Below are positions 3-38,744 of a DNA stretch of 42,791 nt, one piece after another; position 1 is the first letter of the stretch, and each line of letters starts with the position of its first letter. The position numbers and the translations under genes are program-made. The stretch lies in contig NC_068985.1 of assembly GCF_001194135.2 (NCBI RefSeq), positions 36,643,239 through 36,686,029 on the forward strand. The letters are read 5' to 3'. The notes beneath the pieces were generated by a model. That model was not told where the DNA came from, made no database searches, and was given only the letters and a program-made list of their open reading frames with translations. Source of the DNA: Octopus bimaculoides. Its lineage: Eukaryota.

Positions 3-359
3 TGCTCCTGGGAGCTCCTCTATGCTGATGACCTTGCACTAATTGCTGAGTCACTATCAGAATTAGAGGAGAAGTTTCAGGTGTGGAAGCAAGGACTAGA
101 ATCGAAGGGCCTTAGAGTCAACTTAGCTAAAACCAAAGTCTTAATAAGTAGGAAGGTAGACAAAACACAAACACCTTCAGGTAGATGGCCCTGCTCGATC
201 TGTAGAAAAGGCGTAGGTAGAAACTCTATAAGATGTACCCAGTGCAAGCTATGGACACATAAGAGGTGCAGCAATATCAAAGGAAGGTTAATTAGGAAGT
301 TAGTTTTTGTATGTGGCAGATGTTCAGGAGCAATAAACACTGTGACTCTGGAATTATAA
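3..359 (+). mobile_element. RTE-clade LINE fragment: RT catalytic motif followed by a PHD-type zinc finger
   Basis: Open frame from 3 reads CSWELLYADDLALIAESLSELEEKFQVWKQGLESKGLRVNLAKTKVL (YADD and the RTE-like GLxVNxxKTK), then C-x2-C-x10-C-x2-C-x4-H-x2-C-x14-C-x2-C at 192-323. The element runs off the left edge of the window. Confidence 0.9.
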
Positions 360-2547: not shown

Positions 2548-2700
2548 CTGGGAACCGATAGTGTTGAGGTACTTCATTTAATCGAAAGGATGACAGGCAA
2601 AGTCAACCCCAGTAGCATTTCAGATCAAGATATAAAACCAGAAGAAATGCCGTTCAGCATTTTGTCCGGTGTTCTAACGATTCTACCAACTTGTCGCCTT
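2548..2700 (-). mobile_element. tRNA-derived SINE, family S1 (partial)
   Basis: Shares GAAAGGATGA.AGGCAAAGTC.ACC and CTAACGATTCT.CCA.CT.G.CGCCTT with the copies at 13.5, 32.0 and 38.6 kb. Confidence 0.8.
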
Positions 2701-3975
2701 CAATTCAAGAAGCTAATAAAGTGAAAGTATCAACCGAAGTTGAACCTTGTTCGCAAAGTTGAGTTTTCTGGGAATGTTACCACTACTCTACAACATTGAT
2801 ATTGCACAGTATTTGGCTACATACCAAATAATTAACGCTATACAGCAATTAATATTATGCTGTCAATAAGATGCTGTTACAGTAATTACTAAATGTCCTG
2901 TATCTAGCAGAAATCACAAGACTTTCAACCGGAAATAATATCAGTCATACCAGATGTGTTGGCACCCAACAGCGGCTGCAAGGCTGTCATATCGACCTGA
3001 CAGTGTTTATAACATCAAACAACTGGTTTCCAACTGACATCTCAAGGCTTTTCTGTTGATCATCTCATCAATACTATTAACCATAGACGTTAGATATTTA
3101 ACAAGACGCGCAAAAACTATCGCATTGAGCGGACAATATACGTCAATGAAGCCAAGCAATTGGTATCCAGCAGCGACTAGAAGACTTGTTGAACTAAATT
3201 CTGTACTAATAGTGAGCCGAAGCGTTCGTGGTTTAAACCAAAGGAAAGCAATTAAATTTCTTTAAATGAATTATTTGTTAGTTTAACTTGATCTCTCTAT
3301 TTACTCAACATCGAATGTAATACTTTCAGTTAGACGTAGTTTCATTTGTTTAACTTTCTTACAGAGCTCTCTATTAGCAGAACACACAAGCTTCTCTGGT
3401 TTCTATTGAAATACCAATTTTAATCGCATTGGCGGCATGGAGAAAGAAAGAAAGAAAGCAATAAAGAAAGTAAGAATTAATGAACTACAGAATTACAGAA
3501 TTCCAACAGATGTACCCCAAGACTCCTCTCTTTCTTCATGCACGTGGTTTCCTCTTGGGAAAGAAAAAAGTAAACAAAAACAGAAAATTCATTTCAATAA
3601 GATTTTCGAAATAAATACACAAATTAATGAAAAATGAATAAATAGTTCAGAAATTAAAAACTTCGAAAATAGCTTTCAAAATAAAATTGCATGAACTGGA
3701 CAAATAACGATAGTTTCTCATTACTGCAGATATTTATTTATTTCTAAAATTATTTACTTATTTACTGTTCAGGCAGTTTCGAGTCTTAGTTGCAAAAGTT
3801 TCTTTTTTTTTTTTGTTTCAAATTATTTACTTAGAAGGAAGAAACTCCACAACTATCGAGGAACATTCGAATTTGGATAGATTGATGCGGTTTTAAGTTT
3901 ACAATTGCATAGCAAACATGGGCGGGAAGAGAATTTCAGTAAACTGAAGTTATAGCGACAAAATATTGGTAAGCA

Positions 3976-4237: not shown

Positions 4238-4481
4238 ATTATTTCTGTTTCGCTACTTTTATCTCAGTTTTCTCTCTATATCTGCTTTAAGGTTATTATG
4301 ATAACTTTCCTTGTATGTGTGTGTGTGTGTGTGGCCGTTTCAGTTCCGATCTTTTCCTTGTACTTTAACGTTTCGCCTGATTTTGTGTGGTGTTGGTTCT
4401 ACTATGTTACTTCTGTTAGGCTATGCGAGCATTTACTTCGAGTCACTGGTTAGTCACTGAGTTTCATTCACTGTGTGCATT

Positions 4482-5929
4482 CTTAGGAGGGAAAGAAAAA
4501 GTCTTGAAGATGACACAAGGTCTAGATGTCTTGCAACTACCACTGCAATCGATTGTGTTTCTTACATGGTGATGGATGACAGGCGATCGACTATGAATCA
4601 AATAGCCGATGGCATTTGCATTTCTCGTGAGAAAGTTGGGAACATTCTGAACAGTGGACTTGGTATGATGAAGGTGGATGTTACATCTTGTGGCACCTGA
4701 TCAAAAGCGCACCAGGCTGATCACATCACAGGAAAATCTAACATTGCTTTAGGCAGATGCAGCTGATTCTCTTGAATGTTTCCTAACCCAGGATGTATGC
4801 TGGGTTCATCACTCCGAGCCAGAGACAAAAAGACAACCCATGCAATGGAAACACCTCTTCTCACCTGCTCCAAAGAAAGCCAAGGTCGTTTTATCTGCAG
4901 AGAAGGTGATGGCCTCAGTTTTTGGGATGGAAAAGACAAATCATATTGAAGTCTGGTGCAGCTTGCCAGCAGCCGTCCAACTCATGCCAGCATGGACAAC
5001 GGACGTTAAACGATGATGATGGGGGTAGGTTGGTCTGTTTCTGTTGTTAATTAGCTGCATGTGGAGACATTTTCTCAAACAACCAACTGGCCCGAGGATT
5101 AAGCGAACACTTGTGTTTCTTATCAAGGCACTCAAAGAAATATCAAGGTCATCTTAATGAATAGCTGGGCCATTTCTTGACTATTTCTGGCGATAAAAAC
5201 TTCAAACGGTTTTGAGAATAAATAATTTGGATGGATTTAGTAAAATAAACTCTTCTTTGCCTTATTAAGCAGGTGTTTTGAACATATATTAATAAAAGGT
5301 TCTTGTATAAAAATTATGAGAGTTTTACTTCAGATATAAAAGGAGGTGATGACAAGTGACCGAGACCTTTGGCGGATATATTGAGAAGATTCGTCAAGCC
5401 AAGTGAAATCGTAGTCGTGGCCGATGCCGGTGTCACGTAACTGGCACCCATGCGGGTGGCATATATTTATTGACAGTCTTCAAAAGGGTCATGTCATCAA
5501 TGGAGAGTACTATGCCAACTTGCTGAGGCAGTTACGAGAGGCTACCTAGACCAAGCATCCAGGAAAACTGACGAAAGGCGTCTTGCTTTATCAGGACACT
5601 GCTCCAGCGCGTAAGTCCTTTATTTCAACGGCTGCTGTGCGTAACTGTGGGTTTGAACTTTCCCTATTCTCCTGATTTGGTTTCATCCGACTATTATCTG
5701 TTACCCAACATGAAAAAATATTTGGCTGGGAACAGTGATGATGACGTCATATCTGATATTGACCTTTTTTTGACCAACAGGATGAAAGATTCTTCACTAA
5801 AGGAATCCAAGCACTGAAACACTAATGGAAGAAGTACAGCAAGGGGTACTATGTTGAAAAATAAAGCTCATTTGGTTACATTCCATGAGAATGACTTAGT
5901 CAACTTATGAAATTTTCAGCCGACTTTCG
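4482..5929 (+). mobile_element. Mariner transposon relic (irritans-like), 5'-truncated, split by a ~520-bp insert at ~4938-5457
   Basis: Translations: EDDTRS..VMDDRRSTMNQIA..ISREKV; TQDVCWVHHSEPETKRQPMQWKH; KVMASVF; YQDTAPARKS; PYSPDLVSSDYYL. The right end TGAAATTTTCAGCCGACTTTCG|TA is TIR-like. Confidence 0.88.
4939..5021 (+). mobile_element. 3' tail of an RTE-type LINE/SINE
   Basis: GTCCAACTCATGCCAGCATGGACAACGGACGTTAAACGATGATGATG ends in a (GAT)n tail. Family assignment is from recall. Confidence 0.6.
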
Positions 5930-10283: not shown

Positions 10284-11330
10284 ATGTCCAGTCATAGAGT
10301 GACCAATGGTTTCGCATCCATAAAGGGCCTAGCCCCATGGATGGCTCGTCAGACTCTAAAGCCGAAGACACACACTTACGATAGACTTTTAGACAATTGC
10401 ATAACACAGAAATGTAGACGCGCTTCCCCGGACACATACGACAACATTAAAAGTGAAGCCAAACAGATAGGAATTAGCCTACGTATAGAAGATAGGGTAG
10501 AAATTTTAGCCAAGAGAAATGCCTTCATCACAATCAAAGTCCACAAGCCGAACTTTGCCTCTAATCCCAAATGCCGCCTGATCAACCCAGCTAAATGCGA
10601 GATTGGCTAGGCGAGCAAACATACTGAGGAAGATCAACGACGACATAGGGAAGCTTCCGCCCTCTCCCTATAGCGCAGTACAAAAGAGATGACCTCGTGG
10701 TTTAACTCCAACCGGGGGAAGGGCAGAACAAGGTTCACACAGTTCGACATAATCGACTTTTACCCGTCTATATCGAAAGGGTTGCTGATCAAAGCACTTC
10801 CCTTCGCTAAGGGCTTCACGGACATTAGCAACAGGGATATAGACGTTATCATGCACACCAGGAGAACGGTGCAGTTCAATAAAGATTCGACGTGGGTCAA
10901 GCAATCCGACCCGAGGGTTCCTACGACAGCGCCGACGTTTGTGATCTCATCGGACCTAGACACCTTAAGTAAGAAGTTTCCTTTAGTCCTTTTCGGTCTC
11001 TACAGAGATGACGTTCTGACCACCTTTAGAGGAGCCAGCAGGCACACACTTGATAGGCTTAGAAAGGAATTGATCAGCGCCCTAGGCTCCATGGGACTCA
11101 GAGTTACTATCGCGACTAACCTCACCACCGTAGACTTTCTAGATGTTACTCTAAACTTGGGCTCCGGTTCACACAGGCCCTAGCGCAAGTCAAACGAGAG
11201 GCTGTCCTGCACCAATACAGCCTCCTTCCACCCTTTAACGTGTTCAAGAACCTAGTGAAGGGTGTCAGTAAGAGTATCCCGAATCTATCCTCAGGTCAAG
11301 AAATTTTCGACGCTGCAGTCCCCTACTCTG
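10284..11330 (+). mobile_element. Penelope-like element reverse transcriptase relic (possibly Naiad-type)
   Basis: AFITIKVHKPNF..NPKCRLINPAK.EIG; QFDIIDFYPSIS; GSYDSADVCDLIG (shifted frame); GLYRDD; VDFLDVTLNL; thumb motif HP.NVFKNL.KGVSK.I.NLSS..EIFD.A.PY. It has TAG stops and frameshifts. Confidence 0.88.
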
Positions 11331-13042: not shown

Positions 13043-13502
13043 TTAGTTGATTATAAGCGTTTATATGTATGTGTGTATGTATTTATTAAACTATTTTCTC
13101 ATAATTTTCTATTTCGTCTCTCTTTCTCATATAAGCATATCATATATATTGATATGTCTAAAGAAGATTCAATTGTCGGATATAAAAAAACAACCACCAA
13201 ATTTAGGCAGATGATGAATAAGGTGGCATATCATTTATCTGTTTGGTTAGCGGCATAAGATTTTTTTGATTAACAGTCCTGAGGTCAACTTCAGTGTGTT
13301 GTCTTAGCTTTTCATTTCTCATTAGATATTTACGATATCTGAAATATATATGTAAAAATAGAATAGGCACTGGACTACTTTTTGCTAATATTCTGTTGAG
13401 AGTAGCCCAAGTTTTTCAAGCTTGTTAGACCTGGGCTAATAGATTTAAGTGACTCGTCTAAAAACTTTCGATGAAATACAAACTTTATTATTACTGCTTC
13501 TT

Positions 13503-13716
13503 GAAGCGGCGAGCTGCAGAATCGTTGGCATGCCAGGTAAAATGTATAGCGGCCATTTCATCCGTCTTTATGTTCTCAGTTCAAATTCCACCGAGGTCGA
13601 CTTTGCCTTTCATCCTTTCGGGTTCGATGAAATAACTACCAGCTGAGCACTGGGGTTGATGTAATTAACTAGTCCCCTTCCTCACAATTTCAGGCCTTGT
13701 GCCTATAATGGAAAAG
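13503..13716 (+). mobile_element. tRNA-derived SINE S1, near full length
   Basis: A-box-like GGCGAGCTG.CAGAATCGTTGG, B-box-like GTTCAAATTCC, core GAGGTCGACTTTGCCTTTCATCCTTTCGGG. Flanked by the 16-bp direct repeat ATTATTACTGCTTCTT. Confidence 0.88.
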
Positions 13717-13732
13717 ATTATTACTGCTTCTT

Positions 13733-13893
13733 AAGGCGGTGAGCTGGCAGAATGCTTAACGATATTTTGCCCGTCTTTACGTTCTGAGTTCAAATTCCGC
13801 TGAAGTTGACTTTACCTTTCATCCTTTCAGGGTCGATGAAATAAGTGCCAGTCGAACGCTGAAGTTGATGTAATCGACAAGTCCCTTCCCCAC
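13733..13893 (+). mobile_element. SINE S1, second tandem copy with internal deletion
   Basis: AAGGCGGTGAGCTGGCAGAA..GAGTTCAAATTCCGC..CATCCTTTCAGGGTCGATGAAATAAG. Confidence 0.85.
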
Positions 13894-14342: not shown

Positions 14343-15591
14343 TTGGTCATCCCATGAATAATGCATTTTTTAATACTTCTTTTATTTTTGAAAATTAAGT
14401 TCTTTTTAAATCTTCAGTTTCTACAATGCTCTTCCATCTATCTGGTAGACTTGCAAGGCTCCTCTTCCAAAATTCACTTGAAAGATACTCCTCCAGTACT
14501 GTTCTAACCTCGTCTACAGAATTCATATCTTTTCTGTCCAAATGATTTTGAAAACTGCGGAATAAATGATAATCAGATGGGGCAATGTCCGGCGAATATG
14601 TTGGATGAGGCATCATTTCTCATTCAAACTGCTCCAGCCTTTGGAATGTCATCCTCGTTATATGTAGCCGAGCATTATTCTGATGGAAGAACACTTTTCG
14701 TCTTGAAAGCAAAGATGGTCGTCTTTCTTCTTGCGCTGACTTAAGCCGCTCAAACTGTTCGCAGTAGATCTCCTTTGTTATCGTTTAGTTTGGGTTGAAA
14801 AGTTCAAAGCGGACTAAACCTTTCATATCTCACCAAACAGATAACAACACCTTACATGGGTGAAGACCTTCTTTAGCCTGGGATGCCGGTGTTTCTCTTT
14901 TCCTTACCCACTGTCTTCGGCGCTTGACATTTTTATAGAGAGCCCATTTCTCGTCACCAGTCACTATTTGGTCAAAAAAAAAAAAAAGAAAAGGTTCATT
15001 CGTGAGATGTGACTCTCTACGCGCGATTAGACTCGGAATGTTTGTGAGGAACTTATTGACCCAATTTCCCGACTTATCCGATGGCACGCAGGTGTCGATG
15101 AATGGTTGAATGACCAAATCCAAGCTTCTCTGTTAGTTCCTCAACAGTTGCAATGGGATTTTGTTCCATCAGGGTTTGCAGGACGTCCTCGTCGAGCCCT
15201 GCAGATCTTCCAGGACGAGGCTCGTCTTCTAGACTGTAGTTTCCAGCTCGAAATTTCTAGAGCCACCGTTGACCTTGGCTTACGCTCATTGTCTAATCTC
15301 CATATTGTATAAATATTCCTCGCACTTTCCGTTGCGTTGTTGCCTTTAGTGAACCCACAAAGCAAAATATGCCGAATATGCTCCTTTGTCACTTACATTA
15401 TAGCTTTGAAAAAATAACTGTTAAAATCGAACTGCACTCTTCAAAACTGACACCAAGAATAAGTGGATGGTAAAATTACTACCTGCTTTTATAGCAAGTT
15501 GAGCAAGTTGATGCCTGTAGTTTATCCTGTCCTCCTCCGACTTTTAGTTCATGCAATTGAAAAAAACCTCATTATTTATGGGATGACCCAA
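14342..15591 (-). mobile_element. Full-length (1250 bp) defective mariner transposon
   Basis: TIRs TTTGGTCATCCCATGAATAATG and CATTATTTATGGGATGACCCAA, with TA on both sides. ATG at 15398 is followed by TAA. Motifs TKEHIRHILL, IVTGDEKW, HQNNAR (second D lost) and PHPTYSPDIAPSDYHLFRS, with frameshifts. Confidence 0.95.
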
Positions 15592-17694: not shown

Positions 17695-18395
17695 CAGGTG
17701 TAAGTCGAAAATTATATGCACTCTTGTTTCTGTAATTTATTAAAACAAAAGCCGGGGTTGAACAATTACATCATTTTCGACAAAGTTTCGTAGCTCTTCG
17801 ATGCACTTCTTCCGGCGGTCCACAAGCTTGCTTATCCATCGGAGAAGAATGTTTTCGGCTGGTCGCGCAGCCATTCATACACCGCGTCCTGCATTTCTTC
17901 GTCCATAGCAAATCGATGGCCTCGTAACGGATGTTCCGAGCGGTTCAAAGAGGCGAAGTCTGGTCTGTACGCAGGGCATTCCAGTAGCCCGAAACCCAAT
18001 TTTTCAATGGTTTCAACGGTGTAGGTGGCTGTATGTTAGCGTGCAACCATAACACTTACTTTGACAATAGACTTTTACGTTAGGTGCGAATTGTTGGCTT
18101 CAGTTTGTTGGCCAGCATTTCACTATAAACTACACTGTTGACTGTAGATCCCCTTCCTTGGTAATGTTTCAGCATAGGCCCTTTGGCGCCCCTCAAATAG
18201 TAAGCATCACATTTTCTGTCAAAGGTTTGGTCTTGAATTTCTTTTTCGCTTGCGATTCAGAGTGTTTCCATTCCTTACACTGCTTTTTGAATTCTGGCTC
18301 AATGTGGTGGACACAATCTCTTCTCCTGTGACTATTCTCTCCATAAATACTTCACACTCATCATTGTAGCGGTCGAGTAAGCGTTGATAGATCTC
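17695..18395 (-). mobile_element. Mariner transposon relic, C-terminal half (irritans-like)
   Basis: Minus strand: QRLLDRYNDECEVFMERIVTG..CVHHIEPEFKKQCKEWKHSES..KKKFKTKP..VMLTI. A TIR-like end TA|CAGGTGTAAGTCGAAAATTAT lies at 17693. Confidence 0.82.
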
Positions 18396-18438
18396 TTGGT
18401 ACTCACCTCAGAAGGGAATATAAAGGCATGCATGTGTT

Positions 18439-19507: not shown

Positions 19508-22500
19508 AATTAGAAATAACGAATTTCTAAATCTCTCAGAGAGACTTAAGCAGTAGTGATGCGATAAAGGTTGTTTCTCATTTAATGCAGATGATTCAAT
19601 ATATATCTTTCTGTAATTGCAGATATTTGAATGTAATTGGTATATTCAGGAATTTAGGGACGATTAGAAATTATGGATTTATGAATTTATTTCCTTGCTG
19701 AAAAATTATTGAACGTTTTGAAACAACTTTCTGAATTCAACTTTGATTTGGTAAAAAATATATTCACTGTTGTGACAAATGGAACAAGTGTCATGGTTAC
19801 ATTTTGCCAGTATCAATTGTGTTATGTATATGAACTTCATTCAGTTGTTTGTGATGATTTCTTTACAGTAAAACCGTGTCAAAATCTGAAATTAGCTTAA
19901 TTATGTTTCTTGAAATGACGATAACGAGTACCTTTGAGGATAATGATTAAAATACAGATTCTACGGTTACGAATTTGGTTAAGAGTTACATCAATGTACA
20001 ACAAACTGAGCTTAGTGTAGACTTTGGCTGAAGGAAATTAAGGATTGACAATCTCATTAAAAACTGAAGACAATTGCCAGGTCATTTCGTAGGTTTCTAT
20101 TTTAAAAGAAGTGAAATACTTCAGAAATTTGTTAAAGAAGAGCATATTCATGAATTGTAATTAATTAATGATATTGTGCTGGAATGGTTCATCTGAAATG
20201 TTATTGTAATTTTTTGTTTCTTAAAAGATGTATTGAAAAAATTATGTTCGCTCGACTTTTCAAACAATAAATTTAACGCTGTTGGCACCGCGGTTGCATC
20301 GTCAAGGGAACTAATTAAAATTAAAGTTGAATAACTAAGTTGAAGAGCAACAACTTTGATCTCTGAAAAAGGCATATTTGTTTTCCTTTTAGAAAAAGTA
20401 ATTCGAGAAAATAATCCAATGTTCTTCTTGCTAAAAGAATGTGTCAAGAAAAATTCGAACAGCAAAGGAACAAAAATCTGATTGGATTCGTGAAGTATCG
20501 TTATTTGAAAAAAAAAAAAAAAATCCTTCTAACTTAGGATGTATTTGCTTCATTCTAATTTTGCCATCATAANNNNNNNNNNNNNNNNNNNNNNNNNNNN
20601 NNNNNNNNNNNNNNNNNNNNNNNNNNNNNNNNNNNNNNNNNNNNNNNNNNNNNNNNNNNNNNNNNNNNNNNNNNNNNNNNNAAAAAAAAAAAAAAAAATC
20701 CTTCTAACTTAGGATGTATTTGCTTCATTCTAATTTTGCCATCATAAGCTTGCCTGTAAAATATTTTCAAGCAAATATATGAAAGAATATGTATCCCTCT
20801 TTTAGAAAAAATTGCTTATTTCCCACATCGAAACTGAACCCATGATCTGAAGGATTTACTTTACAAAAAAGAAAAAAAAAAAGAAAAGAAAAGAAAAAAG
20901 AAAAGACCTCAGTACTGAGATTAACTCCAAGGTGAGTGCTGACTTTAATGCATACGTGAAACTTCTGACATAGCTGTTCTTTGCATAGACCATCTCTTGA
21001 AATATATGAATCAAATCATATCTTGTGCCAAAGGGGATGACTTCATTTTATAAACTTGTTTTAATTCTTGAACAATTAAGTGTTGCTCTTTATATCAAAA
21101 AGATATTAGTGCAAAAATTAGAATTCATATATTGAGGCATACATTTTATCGATGTTTTATAGAAACGAGACATACAGGCGAAACAACTCTTTTATTACTA
21201 ATTTTTCTACATGTGAAAAAGAGCGGGTGTTTAGGTTTTGTTTATGAATATCTTTATAATTAGCCACATAAGCAAAAGCATTTCAAACTTCTATACTGTT
21301 ATAAACTTTAGTGAGGGAACATCTGGAAAATGATACTTTTATTGGATCATTTAGAAATTAAATTATCAGCAAAATATAGCATCAGACATTGAGCCACTTC
21401 TTTATGGAGGGGTTGCAGTAATCTCTTTTGTGGTGGGCTTGCCATGCATTATACATTAACATTTGGCATGAATATCCACTCTTTTGATGATATTGGTCCA
21501 AAAGGGAGTGATCTAAGAAGAATACACGTATTATATGAGGTTCTGCAAAGATATTTAGGTTCCTCAGTGGTGGTAATAAGAAGCTGTTTCAGAAGATCTG
21601 GTGTATCAGCAACGACTGTTGCATCTAATGTCTCATTGGAACAGCTTATTTTTGATTACATGCCATTGAAACTTTCTTTCAGAAGTATTATAATGTCCAA
21701 GATCAAGGCTGAAAATACTCCATTTTTATTGCTCACGTATATATGACCAAGATCTCATCACTCGCTGCTTGTCACGATTTTGAGATTTCTGTCTTTCCTG
21801 GCACTGTTGCGAGTTCTTTGGTGTCTACGAGCAGTCTGTATGTTTCAAGTTGTATGTATGCAGCTAATCCTGTTGCACTCTGTTCAAGTTGTCTTTTTGT
21901 AGCCTCTCTAATTTCCTGTCTTTGTTAGTCTGAAATATTTTGTGAGCAGCATTTCTGGTATCTATTTCCGCTGCCTTTAGACTACAATTGCGTTCGTTAG
22001 CGGAGGATGTTATGAGCGTGGGACATTTTTATCGTGGTATTTTTGACGAAAAATCATCAGTATCCCACCCTACCCCACCCCAAACAGACAGTTATATGTT
22101 TAATAGAAATTACAGAAGTATGATTTTGAAGAGAGATGCAATTGCAAAGTGATGCAAATGATTTGCGAAATGAACGATGAGTATTTGATTTAAATGGCAG
22201 TAGATATGGAAACATAACCAAAGAGGTTAATTAGGAATTGGAAAGAAGCAACTGAAAGACAAAGAATGCAAGAATAGCGGATGCATGAAATTAACAGAAC
22301 ATGTAACATGTTTTATCAGTCAGTGTGTGTATGAATGATGCTTCGAAAAGAAACATCTCTATTTTAAAGCAGGCTGCATCTCTGATTCCAACTCTGACTC
22401 CCGACTTAGATTGTTGCCTGCTCAGGCATGTGCGTGTAAGAAAAGGGATATATCTTTCTTTTTACCCTTTTTCTAATGCGTGCTATTCTTTTGTTTTAGA

Positions 22501-26090: not shown

Positions 26091-26519
26091 CGTGTGTGTT
26101 GTAAACAAAAACATTGATCATGAATTCGCACATATACACATACGTACGCACACACACGTACATACTCAAATACATTTCACATGTACAATTAACTATTAAA
26201 GTTTTCACAAATCTTAACACCTTTTTTATTTTGCTTCATCGTTTTCTTTTGCAGATTTAATATATATAATAAAAAAAAAACGCACAACAAATACCAGAAC
26301 ATTTATTAGGAAATTTCCCCACAGGGAAATTAGTCGATAAATGACAGTGATGTTAGTGTGATGGTGGTAGAGGAATATTATTTTTCGCATAAAACCATCT
26401 CCTCTAATTAACTGTACTCGATAGATTGAGTGAATTGACACCTCTCATCCGCAGTAACTTCATACTTTTGCAAAACAAGAGCCATAACAAAAATAACAGC
26501 AACTCTGGTTCATTTGTTT

Positions 26520-27570
26520 ATTATTGTAAGCAAAATACCAAAGTTAAACATCTACGTATCAATGAATTACTGTTTGCAGACGATTGTATATTACTTGTGC
26601 CAGATGAGTTCAACATGCAAGTATGCAGGGATCAGTTCTCAAAGTCTTGCAGTAACTTTGGCCTTACTATCAGCACTACAAAAACAAGTACTGCATCAAT
26701 GTCACAGGGAATAAAAGTGGGAATGAGCTATAAAAAAGTAAAGGTTCTTCAAAATCTTGCACTGTCCTTAAATACCTGCATCGATGCTGAAGTATCATCA
26801 CCTATCGGTAAGTGCAAGGAATGTACTGGTTTTGGAAGACTGCAGCATAGATTGTGTGGCACCTAAGGCCGTCTTAGCAGTATTATAAATCCCTACCCAT
26901 CCTACCATGACTAACCTATACACTGGACCCAATAATTTTTATTTATTGACAATAAACCTCAGGATACACAGATCAGAATTGGGCCCCTAGACCTGTGAGA
27001 CCTCTTCTTCGGGCAAATCAGTGTACTGGGCCCTATACTATTTATTGATAGTAAACCACAACATACATAAATCCGAATTGGGCCTCTAGACCCATGAGGT
27101 CCCCGAAAAGAACCCAGTGTTCTCATGTTTTAAGACGGCTCTGGTGGCAACCGAATATATGCTGAGCTTCCAAAATCAAAATCTACAATTCTCTAATCTT
27201 ACCAGCTCCCCTCTCTGGTTCAGAAACTTGGACAGTGTACCAGTGCCATGTGAAAAGTTTAATTATTCTCACATATCCTGTAAAAGGAAGATTCTAAACA
27301 AAGTGGCTGGATTAAATTCTCAATTCAGAGATTCTCAGAAGGTTCTCAGTTTGTTTGTTAAGCTCAAGTTAATCCAGTTGTGTTTGGCTGGACATTCCAG
27401 AATGCTCGACTGTTACTGTCTATTCTGAGCTCGCAAAAAGGAGACACAATGTTGGTGGTACACCACATGAATATTCAAAGATGCACTGAAAGCAACCTGA
27501 AAAAACCGTAGGATAAACCCAAACTCACGGGAAGATCATGCTCGGGACAGGGCTGCACAGGAGTCGAGCA
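26520..27570 (+). mobile_element. RTE (BovB-like) LINE 3' relic, interrupted by a hAT MITE
   Basis: LRINELLFADDC..QFSKSCSNFGLTISTTKT..IDAEVSS..GFGRL. After the MITE: KIKIYNSLILP..SETWTVYQ; LAGH.RM; FKDALKA..INPNS.EDHARDRAA. Confidence 0.88.
26864..27143. mobile_element. Non-autonomous hAT MITE, 280 bp, with 8-bp TSD
   Basis: TIRs TAAGGCCGTCTTA and TAAGACGGCTCTG. TSD GTGGCACC / GTGGCAAC (7/8). Internal ~85-bp diverged tandem duplication. Confidence 0.88.
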
Positions 27571-27820: not shown

Positions 27821-27890
<70 letters not shown>

Positions 27891-28544: not shown

Positions 28545-28857
28545 TTATCTTCTGGCACTCCGTCGGTTACAGCGACGAGGGTTCCAGTTGATCTGATAAA
28601 CGGAACAACCTGTGCATGAAATTAACGTGCAAGTGGCTGAGAACTTCACAGACACTCGTACTCTTAACGTAGTTCTTAGAGACGTTCAGTATGACACAAT
28701 ATGACAAGGCTGGCCTTGTCTACTCATTTTTGCCAGCTGAATGGACTGGAGCAACGTGGAATAAAGTGTCTTGATCAAGGACACAACGTACCGCCTGGAA
28801 TCGAACTTATGACCTAACGATCGTGAGTCGAATACCCTAACTACTAAGCCACGCGCG
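28545..28857 (-). mobile_element. tRNA-derived SINE S3, near full length
   Basis: Minus-strand head GCGTGGCTTAGTAGTTAGGGTATTCGACTCACGATCGTTAGGTCATAAGTTCGATTCC (A and B boxes), followed by GTTGTGTCCTTGATCAAGACAC. Confidence 0.88.
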
Positions 28858-28898
28858 TTGACTAACCTGTCTTACGTCACATTACAAAGCTTTAACTT

Positions 28899-29562
28899 GT
28901 GACGGGAATGCTACATTTGCCAAGACAAAATCCATCACCACTGGATATAGCAAAACAGTGATTGAAAAACTACTGACGTTGCAATTAACCAACTAGCTGA
29001 ATAAAGATTCGTTATGTGCAACAGAAGCACTATCAGATTAGAGTGACAGTCTTTGTATCATACTTAAAGCAATACATCACACAAAACTTGATTGACGGTG
29101 GTATTCGGGAGGAAATAATATCTCTCATGGATTTATCCTCTACTTATCGTAGAGGATAAATAAGCAGCTGATAAAATGATTCGTTTTTAGATTAGCAGAA
29201 TAAATACTGCAACGACACATATCTGCAAAGATCAGTTTACTGATCAATATAATCGAAAACTGTACGAATTAAGCATAACAGGTATTGAGTACAAGAAAGC
29301 TTGTTCGAAATTCTATTAACACAGTGCATCCATGTGAGATATTATCTCCTCACGTATACCACCATCAATCAATCTTTGTGTGATGTATTTGCTTTAAGTA
29401 TGATACAAAGACTGTCACTCTAATCTAATAGTGCTTCTGTTGCACATAACGAATCTTTATTCAGTTAGTTGGTTAATTGCAACGTCAGTAGTTTTTCAGT
29501 CACTGTTTTGCTATATCCAGTGGTGATGGATTTTGTCTTGGCAAATGTAGCATTCCTGTCAC
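28899..29562. repeat. Long inverted repeat: 234/235-bp arms, 195-bp spacer
   Basis: 28899-29132 versus the reverse complement of 29328-29562 differs by about 11 substitutions and 2 indels (manual count). Confidence 0.95.
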
Positions 29563-29609
29563 CACCGCTGGATGATTTCCCTTTGTTACTTATACACTTT
29601 TTGTGTCAT

Positions 29610-29730
29610 TTAACACAGTACGTCCACAAGAGATACTATCTCCGGATGAACACCACAGTTAATTAAACTTTCTGTGATGAATTTGCATTAAGTATGACAC
29701 AGAGATTGTTATTCTAATCTAATACTGCTA
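29610..29730 (+). repeat. Third, more diverged partial copy of the inverted-repeat arm
   Basis: TTAACACAGT..TCCA..GAGATA.TATCTCC..TGTGATG.ATTTGC.TTAAGTATGA.ACA.AGA.TGT.A.TCTAATCTAATA.TGCT aligns to 29317-29440. Confidence 0.8.
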
Positions 29731-29734
29731 CATA

Positions 29735-29780
<46 letters not shown>

Positions 29781-30064
29781 GCATACATACACATACATCA
29801 TACACATACACACAACACAAACACACATACACACACACACAGATATTAATTATCAAATATACAAATATACATATGTATTTGAGTATGTGTACCTGTGTGT
29901 ATGTGAGCGCGTTTGTGTGTGCATGTGCGTACATATCGACATACACTTATGCAAATTCATAAACGTATCCTTTATGTAAAGTTATATAGCTTCCCATTTA
30001 TATACACATGTATTTGTGTCTGTTTATGCGCGTGTGTGTGAGCGTGTATATGTGTGCATGTGTG

Positions 30065-30114
<50 letters not shown>

Positions 30115-30499
30115 NNNNNNNNNNNNNNNNNNNNNNNNNNNNNNNNNNNNNNNNNNNNNNNNNNNNNNNNNNNNNNNNNNNNNNNNNNNNNNNNNNNNNN
30201 NNNNNNNNNNNNNNNNNNNNNNNNNNNNNNNNNNNNNNNNNNNNNNNNNNNNNNNNNNNNNNNNNNNNNNNNNNNNNNNNNNNNNNNNNNNNNNNNNNNN
30301 NNNNNNNNNNNNNNNNNNNNNNNNNNNNNNNNNNNNNNNNNNNNNNNNNNNNNNNNNNNNNNNNNNNNNNNNNNNNNNNNNNNNNNNNNNNNNNNNNNNN
30401 NNNNNNNNNNNNNNNNNNNNNNNNNNNNNNNNNNNNNNNNNNNNNNNNNNNNNNNGCTTTTCTTATCTCACTCATTCCGGAAACTTTCTTGTCATTCCA

Positions 30500-30621
30500 A
30501 GGCAAGAAGTCCTCCTTGAATAGAATTTATGGATGGAATAAAATCAAGACATCGTGAAGGAAAAGGGGGTCTTCTGTAAATTTAAATGACCCCCTACCCC
30601 TCATACAGAACACTGGTTGAA

Positions 30622-30706
<85 letters not shown>

Positions 30707-30708
30707 TG

Positions 30709-30783
<75 letters not shown>
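30500..30783 (+). repeat. (ATG)n(ATA)n microsatellite at 30622-30783, possibly the tail of a short LINE 3' fragment
   Basis: The repeat is read directly. The LINE-tail interpretation of 30500-30621 is weak. Confidence 0.6.
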
Positions 30784-31896
30784 GCAAAAGCAGAATCTGC
30801 AACTATCATCATCAGTACGGCTGTAAAAGAGTAAATTAAAAGTGAAATAAAAATCTAATCGCAAATATAAAGAATACTGTTGGAACTGAGCTAAAAAAAG
30901 GTAATAAAATAACATAAAATAAATGAAATTATATTATATAACCAGTAAGCTGTAGTGTCACCAAGTAATTAAGAATAAACTTGGAAAAGATTAATAAAAG
31001 TTCCCAAATAGCAGAACATCATTGAAAATTAAAAGTCGTCTCTTAATCTGGACGACCGGTCGTATTTTTAACAAATCAAACGCAACCAGCAATCTTTTCC
31101 AATGAAGGTAATAAAAGTAGAGCGTTGTGATTTCATATATCCTGAAGTGAAGATATGTCATTAGGGAGAAGCGCTCATAAAAAAAAAAATCAATGAAGAA
31201 AATAAATAAAGCGAATATGAGATAGGGCAGGAAAATTGAAGGAGAAGAGCTAAAGAATAATTGGATCAGAAGTTGCACTACGCAGCTTTTTATTTTACTT
31301 GCCCATTTTTGGCGCCAGTAATTGGCCGTAAACCTCAAAGATTATCGTCTTCTTTATCGTCTGCTTCATCTGACGCTGCTTTCGGTGCTGTGTCAGCAGA
31401 TAATTGAGAAACCTTATTAACTTCCCGTATAATCACTTTCATCATAGCCTGTTTTTGAGACTGACTTTAACGAAGCTTAAGTTAGAAAACGCAAAAAGCC
31501 ATGTAGTTTTGACATCGTGTGCAGGTTCAAATGTATGCACTTTATATTTGCTGATATATTTAATCCCCACGAAATTCTACAATATTATTTGGTTTATTAT
31601 TTTTTGCTATCAGAAACAAATATTCTATATATCAAGGGAAAAGAAACAGAGTTTGACATTCTATTTGTTAGAGGAAGAGAAATAATGACTTTCTGAAAGG
31701 ATCAATAGCGTTAGTATAAATTGTAATTGTGTCAAGAGAGGATTGAAGCTATCTGTTATCGGAATAGTGAGACTTTTACTTATTGGACAATCCAAATCAC
31801 TTAGTCATTTACAGTGGTATCTGATTTTCATGTTGAGGTTAAAATTGTGTTTACCCAAAAAACATTCCCGAAAGTTCATCCTGCATTTCCCATTCT

Positions 31897-31938
<42 letters not shown>

Positions 31939-31967
31939 AAAATAATACTACTAATAATAATAATCAT

Positions 31968-32183
31968 AATCCTTTTTACTATTGGCTCAAAGCGTGAAAT
32001 TTTCGGCAAGGGGGCCAGTCGAATACATCAACCCGCATTGCCCAACGAGTACTTATTTTATCGACCCCGAAAGGATGAAAGGCAAAGCCGACCTCGGCGG
32101 AATTTCAACTCAGAACGTAAAGCCAGAAGAAATGCCGCTAAGCATTTTGTCCGGTGTGCTAACGATTCTGTCAGTTCACCGCC

Positions 32184-32185
<2 letters not shown>
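31968..32185 (-). mobile_element. tRNA-derived SINE S1, near full length and little diverged
   Basis: TTTATCGACCCCGAAAGGATGAAAGGCAAAGCCGACCTCGGCGGAATTTCAACTCAGAACGTAAAG..CTAACGATTCTGTCAGTTCACCGCCTT. Confidence 0.9.
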
Positions 32186-32266
<81 letters not shown>

Positions 32267-32698
32267 NNNNNNNNNNNNNNNNNNNNNNNNNNNNNNNNNN
32301 NNNNNNNNNNNNNNNNNNNNNNNNNNNNNNNNNNNNNNNNNNNNNNNNNNNNNNNNNNNNNNNNNNNNNNNNNNNNNNNNNNNNNNNNNNNNNNNNNNNN
32401 NNNNNNNNNNNNNNNNNNNNNNNNNNNNNNNNNNNNNNNNNNNNNNNNNNNNNNNNNNNNNNNNNNNNNNNNNNNNNNNNNNNNNNNNTTCTTTCTTTCT
32501 GCTTATTAAAAAACTGACAAAAACTGATGGTCATTTTATCAACGTATGGACGCTGGTTACTCTCGTTCATAGTTTATGTTTGGTTTCTGAAATTTTGAAT
32601 TTTCAATCACCTTTTGGTTTGAACTTGAGAAAGACAGACGTTCTGTCGCAATATTGTTCAAAAAATAAAATATCTAAAATCGCACTCTACGTCTTGAC

Positions 32699-32734
<36 letters not shown>

Positions 32735-33160
32735 GAGGAAATGGAGGAAGAGGACTGATAATTGTGGAAGACAGCTAGTGACAGTTATGAATGCGGGAGT
32801 ATTGGGAGAAGAGAAAAAAGGAAAACAAAGGAAGAAGTACAAAAAAGGACATGAAGAAGAATTATGCAAGAAGGAACTACACAATCAATTCCATGTAGTC
32901 ACAACAGAAGTTGCTGGAAAAAATAGGTGGGATTGGCTGATGAAAAGAATCCCCCAAAAAGTGACCGAGAGCACTATACTGACAGTTCAGGACCAAGCTC
33001 TGACTACGAACTGGAGGGTCAACCCGAGGAATGAGCAAGTGTCTCCGCTGTTCCGCGTCTGCAACGGAGTGGATGAAACCATTGCTCATATCACGAACGA
33101 ATACCCTAAACTTGCCCAAACCATTGAAAAGAGAAGATAGTGCCAATTATTGTTGGATCC
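32735..33160 (+). mobile_element. R4/Dong-clade non-LTR retrotransposon C-terminal relic
   Basis: RGNGGRGLIIVED; WDWLMK..TESTILTVQDQALTTNW..SPLFRVCNGVDETIAHITNEYPKLAQ (decayed CxxC..HxxxxC knuckle); VPIIVG. It starts directly after (TAA)12. Confidence 0.78.
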
Positions 33161-38494: not shown

Positions 38495-38716
38495 CAAAAT
38501 ATTGGTTTCAAATTTTGGCACAAAGTCAGCAATTTCGAGGAAGGGGTTAAGTCGATTCCATGGACCACAGTGATCAACTGGTATTTATTTTATCGACCCC
38601 GAAAGGATGAAAAGCAAAGTAGACCTCGGCGGAATTCGAACTCAGAACGTAAAGACAGATGAAATGCTGCTAAGCATTTTGCCCGATGTATTAACGATCC
38701 TGCCAGCTCGTCGCCG
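38495..38716 (-). mobile_element. tRNA-derived SINE S1, near full length
   Basis: TTTATCGACCCCGAAAGGATGAAAAGCAAAGTAGACCTCGGCGGAATTCGAACTCAGAACGTAAAGAC..CTGCCAGCTCGTCGCC. Confidence 0.9.
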
Positions 38717-38744
38717 TCATCTTTAGTAGAATATTCTGGGCTAA

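What the first reader, a model, noticed from the sequence alone, without database searches (positions are those of the whole stretch)
28899..29562. Long, near-perfect inverted repeat of non-TE-like sequence with an identity gradient
Seen: arms of 234 and 235 bp, about 94% identical. The outer ~170 bp has only 4 substitutions, while the inner ~60 bp has 7 substitutions and 2 indels. The spacer is 195 bp, there is no flanking TSD (TTTAACTT versus CACCGCTG), and I recognise no transposase or SINE motif. Established: a transcribed repeat of this size forms dsRNA that is a substrate for ADAR and Dicer, and coleoids have very high A-to-I editing. Inference: a hairpin-RNA or endo-siRNA locus, an editing-inducing element, a foldback element, or a palindrome homogenised by arm-to-arm gene conversion.
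Basis: partly seen in the sequence, partly recalled or inferred. Interest (0 to 1): 0.7.

Follow-up and report, generated by a model that had tools for sequence, protein, structure and literature searches.

The report
Young local inverted duplicate, non-coding
The 234-base inverted repeat is real, but it looks like an ordinary, neutrally drifting local duplicate of a small non-coding repeat unit in transposon- and microsatellite-rich DNA; it would make double-stranded RNA only if it is transcribed, and nothing here shows that it is.

Summary
Arms 28899-29132 and 29328-29562 are 234 and 235 nt, 94.9% identical (E 7e-104), with a 195-nt spacer. They differ by 11 substitutions and 1 indel, not 2 indels.

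The arm sequence is not unique. A third, older partial copy (79% identical) lies at 29610-29738, in the same orientation as the right arm. Its homology starts 12 nt inside the "spacer", so the repeated unit is at least 247 bp (29316-29562). All three copies sit within 840 bp and nowhere else in the 39 kb of called sequence.

I found no target-site duplication, tandem subrepeats, coding capacity, tRNA or Rfam match.

The identity gradient is weak: p=0.04 after correcting for the chosen cut, and p=0.08 once the same inner-faster trend in the right-arm/third-copy comparison is allowed for. Both arms have accumulated changes, and neither strand preserves RNA pairing preferentially.

Best reading: a young in-situ inverted duplication of a local repeat unit, evolving neutrally. 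It could be an ADAR/Dicer substrate if transcribed. Such local inverted repeats are reported as unusually common in Octopus bimaculoides (PMC5625713).

Genome-wide copy number, the MITE test, could not be done because no cephalopod DNA collection was on hand. Interest is low.

The parts
28899..29132 (-). Left arm: inverted copy of repeat-unit positions 13-247
   Evidence: 94.9% identical to the reverse complement of 29328-29562, E 7e-104
29131..29161 (.). Perfect 13-bp mini-hairpin (ATTTATCCTCTAC / GTAGAGGATAAAT, 5-nt loop). It starts exactly where left-right arm homology ends.
   Evidence: the repeat finder I6; visible in the folds
29133..29315 (.). Spacer proper, AT-rich. It holds no significant further copy of the unit.
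   Evidence: Smith-Waterman against the unit on both strands, compared with 500 shuffles: p=0.27
29316..29562 (+). Repeat unit, most complete copy. 29328-29562 is the right arm. 29316-29327 (TTAACACAGTGC) is shared only with the third copy.
   Evidence: Alignments
29563..29609 (.). 47-nt linker between the right arm and the third copy, with no homology to the unit
29610..29738 (+). Third, older partial copy of the unit (positions 1 to ~135), 79% identical to the right arm, cut short by a microsatellite
   Evidence: blastn E 1e-24; alignment
29735..29841 (.). (AC)n microsatellite that replaces the rest of the third copy
   Evidence: Tandem Repeats Finder

Best explanation
This is a real, evolutionarily young inverted duplicate made in place. 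A ~235-bp stretch of a non-coding repeat unit (most complete copy 29316-29562) already had an older neighbouring copy at 29610-29738. That stretch was copied in reverse orientation about 195 bp upstream, by a replication or repair template switch or by break repair (inferred).

Since then both arms have drifted apart neutrally to about 5% divergence. The locus sits in transposon- and microsatellite-rich non-coding DNA and shows no sign of a dedicated function.

Its only predictable activity is passive. If it lies inside a transcribed region, the RNA folds into a ~235-bp near-perfect duplex. That is the generic substrate of ADAR hyper-editing, and possibly of Dicer.

Shown here: the structure, the third copy, the clustering, the lack of transposon hallmarks, and changes on both arms. 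Inferred: the duplication mechanism, neutrality, and any RNA fate.
For: - The inverted repeat is real and far beyond chance.
- The third copy, at 79%, shares 12 extra nt with the right arm only. The right arm is therefore the ancestral context and the left arm the derived copy.
- All three copies lie within 840 bp and none elsewhere in 39,001 called bases. This has p about 0.0014 under independent placement. A real dispersed SINE family in the same window has 5 scattered copies at ~78%.
- There is no target-site duplication at any offset, for the whole structure or for single units. There are no tandem subrepeats in the arms and no tRNA or Rfam match. The longest stop-free frames are 36-65 aa.
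- Using the third copy as outgroup, 5 arm differences fall on the left lineage, 3 on the right, and 1 is unresolved.
- The substitutions are 7 transitions and 4 transversions, at least two at CpG sites. Wobble-preserving changes are 3 versus 4 between the strands.
- Arms diverged by 5%, with a longest identical run of 57 nt, argue against an assembly fold-back artefact. The nearest N gap is at 30115.
- Base rate: in O. bimaculoides 0.44% of random 50-bp sites have a >95% identical inverted match of at least 40 bp within 2 kb. The authors call this exceptionally high among the species they compared (PMC5625713).
Against: - Genome-wide copy number is unknown, so a low- to middle-copy transposon family with these arms as terminal repeats is not excluded.
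- The copies have coincident edges. The right arm and third copy start together at TTAACACAG. The left and right arms end together at GTCAC. The left arm stops only 12 nt short of the unit start. A discrete mobile unit would give this pattern more naturally than two unrelated duplication breakpoints (about 8% by chance).
- There is no convincing microhomology at the inferred switch points (0-2 nt).
Confidence: 0.55

Rival explanations
1. It is a non-autonomous DNA transposon, either a long-TIR MITE (MULE-like) or a foldback-type element. The element would span 28899-29562 with 234-bp terminal inverted repeats. The third copy would be a solo-arm remnant of a second insertion, and the family would be multi-copy in the genome.
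For: The size (664 bp), non-coding content and long terminal inverted repeats fit. A third copy shows the arm sequence is repeated. The copies have sharp, shared edges. The window is full of transposon remains, including mariner and RT fragments.
Against: There is no target-site duplication of 2-10 bp at any offset, although the arms are only 5% diverged. There are no tandem subrepeats of the FB type. No copy lies outside the 840-bp cluster in 39 kb. The third copy's homology runs 12 nt past the inner TIR edge and then stops, which needs an extra coincidence.
Confidence: 0.22
2. It is a palindrome whose arms are kept alike by arm-to-arm gene conversion. A recent conversion tract over the outer ~174 nt would explain the identity gradient.
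For: The outer 174 nt has 4 differences and the inner 61 columns have 8 (Fisher p=0.003; permutation over cuts p=0.042).
Against: The inner segment also diverges about 2.1 times faster between the right arm and the third copy (17/61 versus 7/47). Allowing for that, the gradient has p=0.08. Overall identity of 94.9% is far below conversion-maintained palindromes. Both arms carry derived changes.
Confidence: 0.1
3. It is a selected hairpin-RNA gene (hpRNA/endo-siRNA precursor) or an editing-inducing element that recruits ADAR to a neighbouring transcript.
For: The predicted duplex is ~235 bp on either strand. It has the same architecture as Drosophila hpRNA loci (PMC10317233 and PMC10292708, listed). 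Coleoids show very high ADAR activity (PMC5625713).
Against: No strand-specific preservation of pairing is seen (3 versus 4 wobble-compatible transitions), and 4 transversions break pairs on both strands. No coding or target-gene signal appears in the arms (the control also failed, so this is weak). There are no exons and no Rfam hit nearby. An AATAAA hexamer lies about 100 nt into the first arm met by a transcript of either strand (read). The base rate of such repeats is high.
Confidence: 0.05
4. It is an assembly artefact: an inverted mis-join or chimeric fold-back in a gapped short-read scaffold.
For: The window is a draft scaffold with 11 N runs. It contains at least one gap-edge duplication artefact, 20508-20572 = 20683-20747.
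Against: The arms differ at 12 positions, with no identical run longer than 57 nt. A diverged third copy exists. The structure is 550 bp from the nearest gap. Fold-back artefacts are normally perfect and have no spacer.
Confidence: 0.04

Closest known systems
Neighbouring inverted repeat pairs that form intramolecular dsRNA (ADAR hyper-editing substrates; Porath et al. 2017, PMC5625713; Zhang et al. 2023, PMC9989829)
   Same: Two oppositely oriented copies of a repeat lie within 2 kb. The outer part is >95% identical over far more than 40 nt. The predicted duplex is long and nearly perfect.
   Different: In the published cases the copies usually belong to abundant dispersed families such as SINEs. 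Here the unit is seen only in this 840-bp cluster. Neither transcription nor editing is shown.
Drosophila hairpin-RNA (hpRNA) loci that produce endo-siRNAs
   Same: It has inverted-repeat arms of a few hundred bp with a short loop and is evolutionarily young. A neighbouring extra copy recalls the tandem hairpin units of some hpRNA loci (from my own knowledge).
   Different: hpRNA arms derive from, and target, a protein-coding gene and yield Dicer-2/AGO2 siRNAs. Here no gene-derived signal was found and no small-RNA data exist.
Long-TIR MITEs / MULE-like non-autonomous elements and foldback (FB) elements
   Same: It is a short non-coding element consisting mostly of two long inverted arms.
   Different: It has no target-site duplication and no FB-type internal tandem subrepeats. 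Copy number is unknown.
Template-switch or fold-back inverted duplications (replication-based mechanisms; established concept, cited from my own knowledge)
   Same: An inverted copy of nearby sequence was inserted close to its source without a target-site duplication. A perfect 13-bp mini-palindrome sits at one junction.
   Different: The mini-palindrome is not at the centre of symmetry. Microhomology at the junctions is only 0-2 nt, so the mechanism is inferred and not demonstrated.

Membership tests
MITE / long-TIR non-autonomous DNA transposon | Terminal inverted repeats at the element ends | tested here: met
   234/235-nt arms, 94.9% identical
MITE / long-TIR non-autonomous DNA transposon | Target-site duplication flanking the element | tested here: not met
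   No 2-10-bp direct repeat at offsets of +/-8 nt. Flanks are TTTAACTT and CACCGCTG.
MITE / long-TIR non-autonomous DNA transposon | Many dispersed copies with the same ends | not testable with these tools
   No cephalopod genome is on hand. Arm patterns are absent from the metagenome and viral collections. The six-frame protein search was null, but its control also failed. Within the window, copies occur only in the 840-bp cluster.
Foldback (FB) element | Arms built of short tandem subrepeats | tested here: not met
   Tandem Repeats Finder reports no array between 28899 and 29562. The repeat finder shows no internal subrepeats.
Foldback (FB) element | Target-site duplication (9 bp in Drosophila FB, from my own knowledge) | tested here: not met
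SINE / retroposed repeat | tRNA/5S/7SL-derived head with pol III boxes, a 3' tail and flanking duplications | tested here: not met
   ARAGORN finds none. Rfam gives nothing at gathering threshold or at E<=1 in the arms. No A-rich or simple-repeat tail lies at either unit end.
hpRNA / endo-siRNA locus | The transcript can fold into a long, near-perfect hairpin | tested here: met
   MFE -430 and -432 kcal/mol for the + and - strands, z about -42. This shows potential only.
hpRNA / endo-siRNA locus | Arms homologous to a target gene | tested here: inconclusive
   No frame is open beyond 65 aa. The six-frame search found nothing, but a control with the neighbouring SINE also found nothing.
hpRNA / endo-siRNA locus | Dicer-dependent 21-22-nt small RNAs from the arms | not testable with these tools
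   No small-RNA data
Potential ADAR hyper-editing locus (sequence criterion of PMC5625713) | A reverse-oriented match >95% identical and at least 40 bp long within +/-2 kb | tested here: met
   The outer 174 nt is 98% identical, with partners 316 nt apart. Criterion quoted.
Potential ADAR hyper-editing locus (sequence criterion of PMC5625713) | Clusters of A-to-G mismatches in RNA reads | not testable with these tools
   No RNA-seq data
Gene-conversion-maintained palindrome | Arm identity far above neutral expectation, with conversion tracts | tested here: inconclusive
   Identity is 94.9% overall. The gradient has p=0.042 after correction and p=0.08 after allowing for site-rate heterogeneity.

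The most novel reading that the evidence does not exclude
The locus is a transcribed hairpin-RNA gene of a coleoid cephalopod. It would yield endo-siRNAs, or act as an ADAR-recruiting element for a host transcript, and would have arisen recently by inverted duplication as Drosophila hpRNAs do. I am not aware of a characterised cephalopod hpRNA locus. A less novel alternative is the founding copy of an undescribed long-TIR transposon family that leaves no target-site duplication.
Probability: 0.05. Interest if true: 0.5.

Novelty: new member of a known kind. Interest (0 to 1): 0.13.

Why it matters
It matters little as it stands. Closely spaced inverted copies of non-coding repeats are the standard source of endogenous dsRNA in animals, and they are reported to be unusually frequent in octopus. 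This locus is one more example.

It could serve as a clean test case: a 235-bp duplex, a 195-nt loop, and arm-specific SNPs that let reads be assigned to each arm. That would suit a study of how coleoid ADARs and Dicer handle a young hairpin, or of how inverted duplications arise next to a short palindrome.

It would become interesting only if small-RNA or editing data showed strong, specific processing, or if the structure proved conserved.

Tried and rejected
**Copy number outside the window**
- Exact 21- and 22-mers from the arm found nothing in metagenome contigs or viral contigs. This is uninformative, because those collections are not expected to hold cephalopod DNA.
- A concatenated six-frame translation of the unit, with X at stops, found no hit among 5.8 billion proteins. 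The same trick with the neighbouring SINE as a positive control also found nothing. I therefore discard the null.
- Exact look-ups of 20 window ORFs found none in the collection.
- The longest RT-like ORF had best hits of only 33-54% identity, all from ENA assemblies. This genome and close relatives are not represented, so I could not fetch cephalopod contigs to count copies.
- A full-text search for six 18-19-mers of the arm found no paper.

**Ideas tested on the window and rejected**
- A fourth degenerate copy in the spacer, suggested by short matches, is not significant against shuffles (p=0.27).
- I checked by eye for Helitron, piggyBac (TTAA), Tc1/mariner (TA) and Transib-like ends. No consistent termini or duplications appeared.
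- A larger palindrome around the repeat is not there. The flanks match only through (TG)n/(CA)n microsatellites.
- Selection for RNA pairing on one strand is rejected (3 versus 4 wobble-compatible transitions).

Full report
**Observation**

The repeat finder reports it as two collinear pieces. One is 28899-29072 / 29389-29562 (174 nt, 98% complementary). The other is 29071-29132 / 29328-29389 (62 nt, 89%). blastn joins them into 234/235-nt arms at 94.9% identity, E 7e-104, separated by 195 nt.

A base-by-base alignment shows 12 differences: 11 substitutions (7 transitions, 4 transversions) and one single-base indel. Four differences, all transitions, lie in the outer 174 nt, and eight lie in the inner 61 columns. 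The flanks (…TTTAACTT | GTGAC…GTCAC | CACCGCTG…) carry no direct repeat.

The arm sequence occurs a third time. Positions 29610-29729 match 29316-29435 at 79% identity (E 1e-24). After a short deletion the match continues to about 29738, where an (AC)n microsatellite takes over. This copy has the same orientation as the right arm and starts 47 nt after it.

The homology between the right arm and the third copy begins at 29316 (TTAACACAGT…). That is 12 nt deeper into the "spacer" than the left-right homology. The repeated unit is therefore at least 247 bp (29316-29562). The right arm sits in the ancestral context, and the left arm is the derived copy, covering unit positions 13-247.

No other copy exists in the window (blastn word 9, E 1e-3; whole-window self-comparison). 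The spacer holds no significant degenerate copy (p=0.27 against shuffles).

**Context**

The window is a draft scaffold with 11 runs of N. The nearest lies at 30115, about 550 bp from the repeat. The surroundings are non-coding and full of mobile-element debris:
- RT fragments at 3-356 and 26408-26863.
- A mariner-type transposase remnant around 14.4-15.4 kb (Pfam).
- A dispersed SINE-like family with five ~78% identical copies.
- A tRNA-derived SINE-like element on the minus strand at ~28545-28865, 34 bp from the left arm (read).
- Many (AC)n and (ATGT)n microsatellites.

I saw no host exon. ARAGORN and Rfam find nothing in or near the repeat, even at E<=1. I could not verify the organism.

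**Independent insertions, a composite transposon, or a local duplication?**

Three copies within 840 bp and none in the other ~38 kb is unlikely if copies were placed independently (about 3×(840/39001)² = 0.0014). The copies therefore arose together or from one another.

Transposon hallmarks are missing:
- No target-site duplication of 2-10 bp at any boundary offset, for the whole structure or for single units.
- No tandem subrepeats in the arms.
- No tail and no pol III head.
- No open frame longer than 65 aa.

With arms only 5% diverged, a duplication of 8-9 bp should still be visible.

One point favours a discrete mobile unit. The copies have coincident edges, and the left arm ends only 12 nt from the unit start. 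I estimate this at about 8% by chance for unrelated breakpoints.

A perfect 13-bp mini-hairpin (29131-29161) begins exactly at the inner end of the left arm. Short palindromes at junctions are typical of template-switch or fold-back repair. However, this one is not at the centre of symmetry, and junction microhomology is only 0-2 nt. The mechanism therefore remains an inference.

**The identity gradient**

When the cut is chosen by the data, a permutation test gives p=0.042.

The right-arm/third-copy comparison shows the same trend: 17/61 differences in the inner segment against 7/47 in the next one, a rate ratio of 2.1. Allowing for that heterogeneity, 8 of 12 differences falling in the inner part has p=0.08. 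A faster-evolving inner segment explains the pattern as well as a conversion tract does.

**Signs of selection or conversion**

With the third copy as outgroup, nine arm differences can be examined. Five changes lie on the left-arm lineage, three on the right-arm lineage, and one is unresolved. At least two transitions are at CpG sites.

Transitions that would keep a G·U pair number three for a plus-strand transcript and four for a minus-strand transcript. The four transversions break pairing on both strands. This is the pattern of two neutrally drifting paralogues.

**Artefact?**

An artefact is unlikely. The arms differ at 12 sites, the longest identical run is 57 nt, a diverged third copy exists, and no gap adjoins the structure. 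The scaffold does contain a gap-edge artefact elsewhere (20508-20572 = 20683-20747), so confirmation with long reads is still worthwhile.

**What it would do**

Either strand, if transcribed across both arms, folds into a ~235-bp duplex (-430 and -432 kcal/mol; shuffles about -145; z about -42). By established knowledge this is a substrate for ADAR hyper-editing and possibly for Dicer.

The locus meets the sequence criterion Porath et al. used for potential dsRNA (>95% identity, at least 40 bp, within 2 kb). Those authors report that 0.44% of random 50-bp sites in Octopus bimaculoides meet it. They call that figure exceptionally high and attribute most such structures to neighbouring inverted repeats (PMC5625713; see also PMC9989829). 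If the window is from an octopus, one such structure per ~100 kb is expected, so finding one here is ordinary.

An AATAAA hexamer sits about 100 nt into whichever arm a transcript meets first (29000-29005 on the plus strand, with its mirror image in the right arm). This is a minor point against efficient read-through.

**What could not be done**

Genome-wide copy number, cross-species conservation, transcription, editing and small RNAs are the decisive tests, and none was possible. The DNA collections hold no match. The protein collection does not contain this genome's ORFs. My six-frame work-around failed its own positive control. No paper prints the sequence.

**Verdict**

This is a genuine, young inverted duplicate of a small non-coding repeat unit. 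It was most likely made in place and is drifting neutrally. It can form dsRNA only passively. A low-copy long-TIR transposon remains a serious rival, at about one in five. A dedicated hairpin-RNA function is possible but unsupported, at about one in twenty. Interest is low.

Noticed in passing
window 29131-29161: Perfect 13-bp palindromic mini-hairpin (ATTTATCCTCTAC…GTAGAGGATAAAT, 5-nt loop), far beyond chance for its length. It starts exactly at the inner junction of the left arm. It may be a footprint of the template switch or repair event that made the duplicate. A second small palindrome, GATCAGTttACTGATC, lies at about 29230-29245.
   Followed up: partly
window ~28545-28865 (- strand): tRNA-derived SINE-like element with box A/B-like motifs at its 28865 end, 34 bp from the left arm. 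ARAGORN and Rfam do not call it. It is the only copy in the window.
   Followed up: partly
window 2583-2719, 13485-13722, 13746-13878, 31966-32202, 38498-38719: Five copies, about 78% identical and in mixed orientation, of another dispersed SINE-like repeat. They served as an internal yardstick for what a truly dispersed family looks like in this window.
   Followed up: partly
window 20508-20572 and 20683-20747: A 65-bp direct duplicate, 100% identical, on both edges of the N run 20573-20681. This is a typical gap-edge assembly artefact.
   Followed up: no
window 14398-15392 (-); also 17835-18407 (-) and 4461-5814 (+): Decayed mariner-type transposase reading frames (Pfam Transposase_1 E 1e-7 plus HTH hits for the first). 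The other two look similar by eye only.
   Followed up: partly
window 3-356, 10284-11183, 26408-26863, 32700-33140 (+): Reverse-transcriptase fragments of non-LTR-type elements: RVT_1 with a PHD finger at 3-356, RVT_1 at 26408-26863, and a weak zf-RVT at 32700-33140. The element at ~26.4-27.8 kb appears to end in an (AC)34 tract at 27821-27888. The best database relatives of the 10674-11180 ORF are only 33-54% identical.
   Followed up: partly
window 29000-29005 (+) and its mirror at about 29452-29462 (-): A canonical AATAAA hexamer lies about 100 nt inside each arm, on the strand that a transcript entering that arm would carry. If used, it would stop transcripts before the second arm. It may be chance in AT-rich DNA.
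   Followed up: no
window 30527-30915 and 32000-32270: Long trinucleotide or simple-repeat tracts that read as poly-L/S/Y/H or poly-N ORFs, next to N gaps. This is low-complexity DNA, not genes.
   Followed up: no
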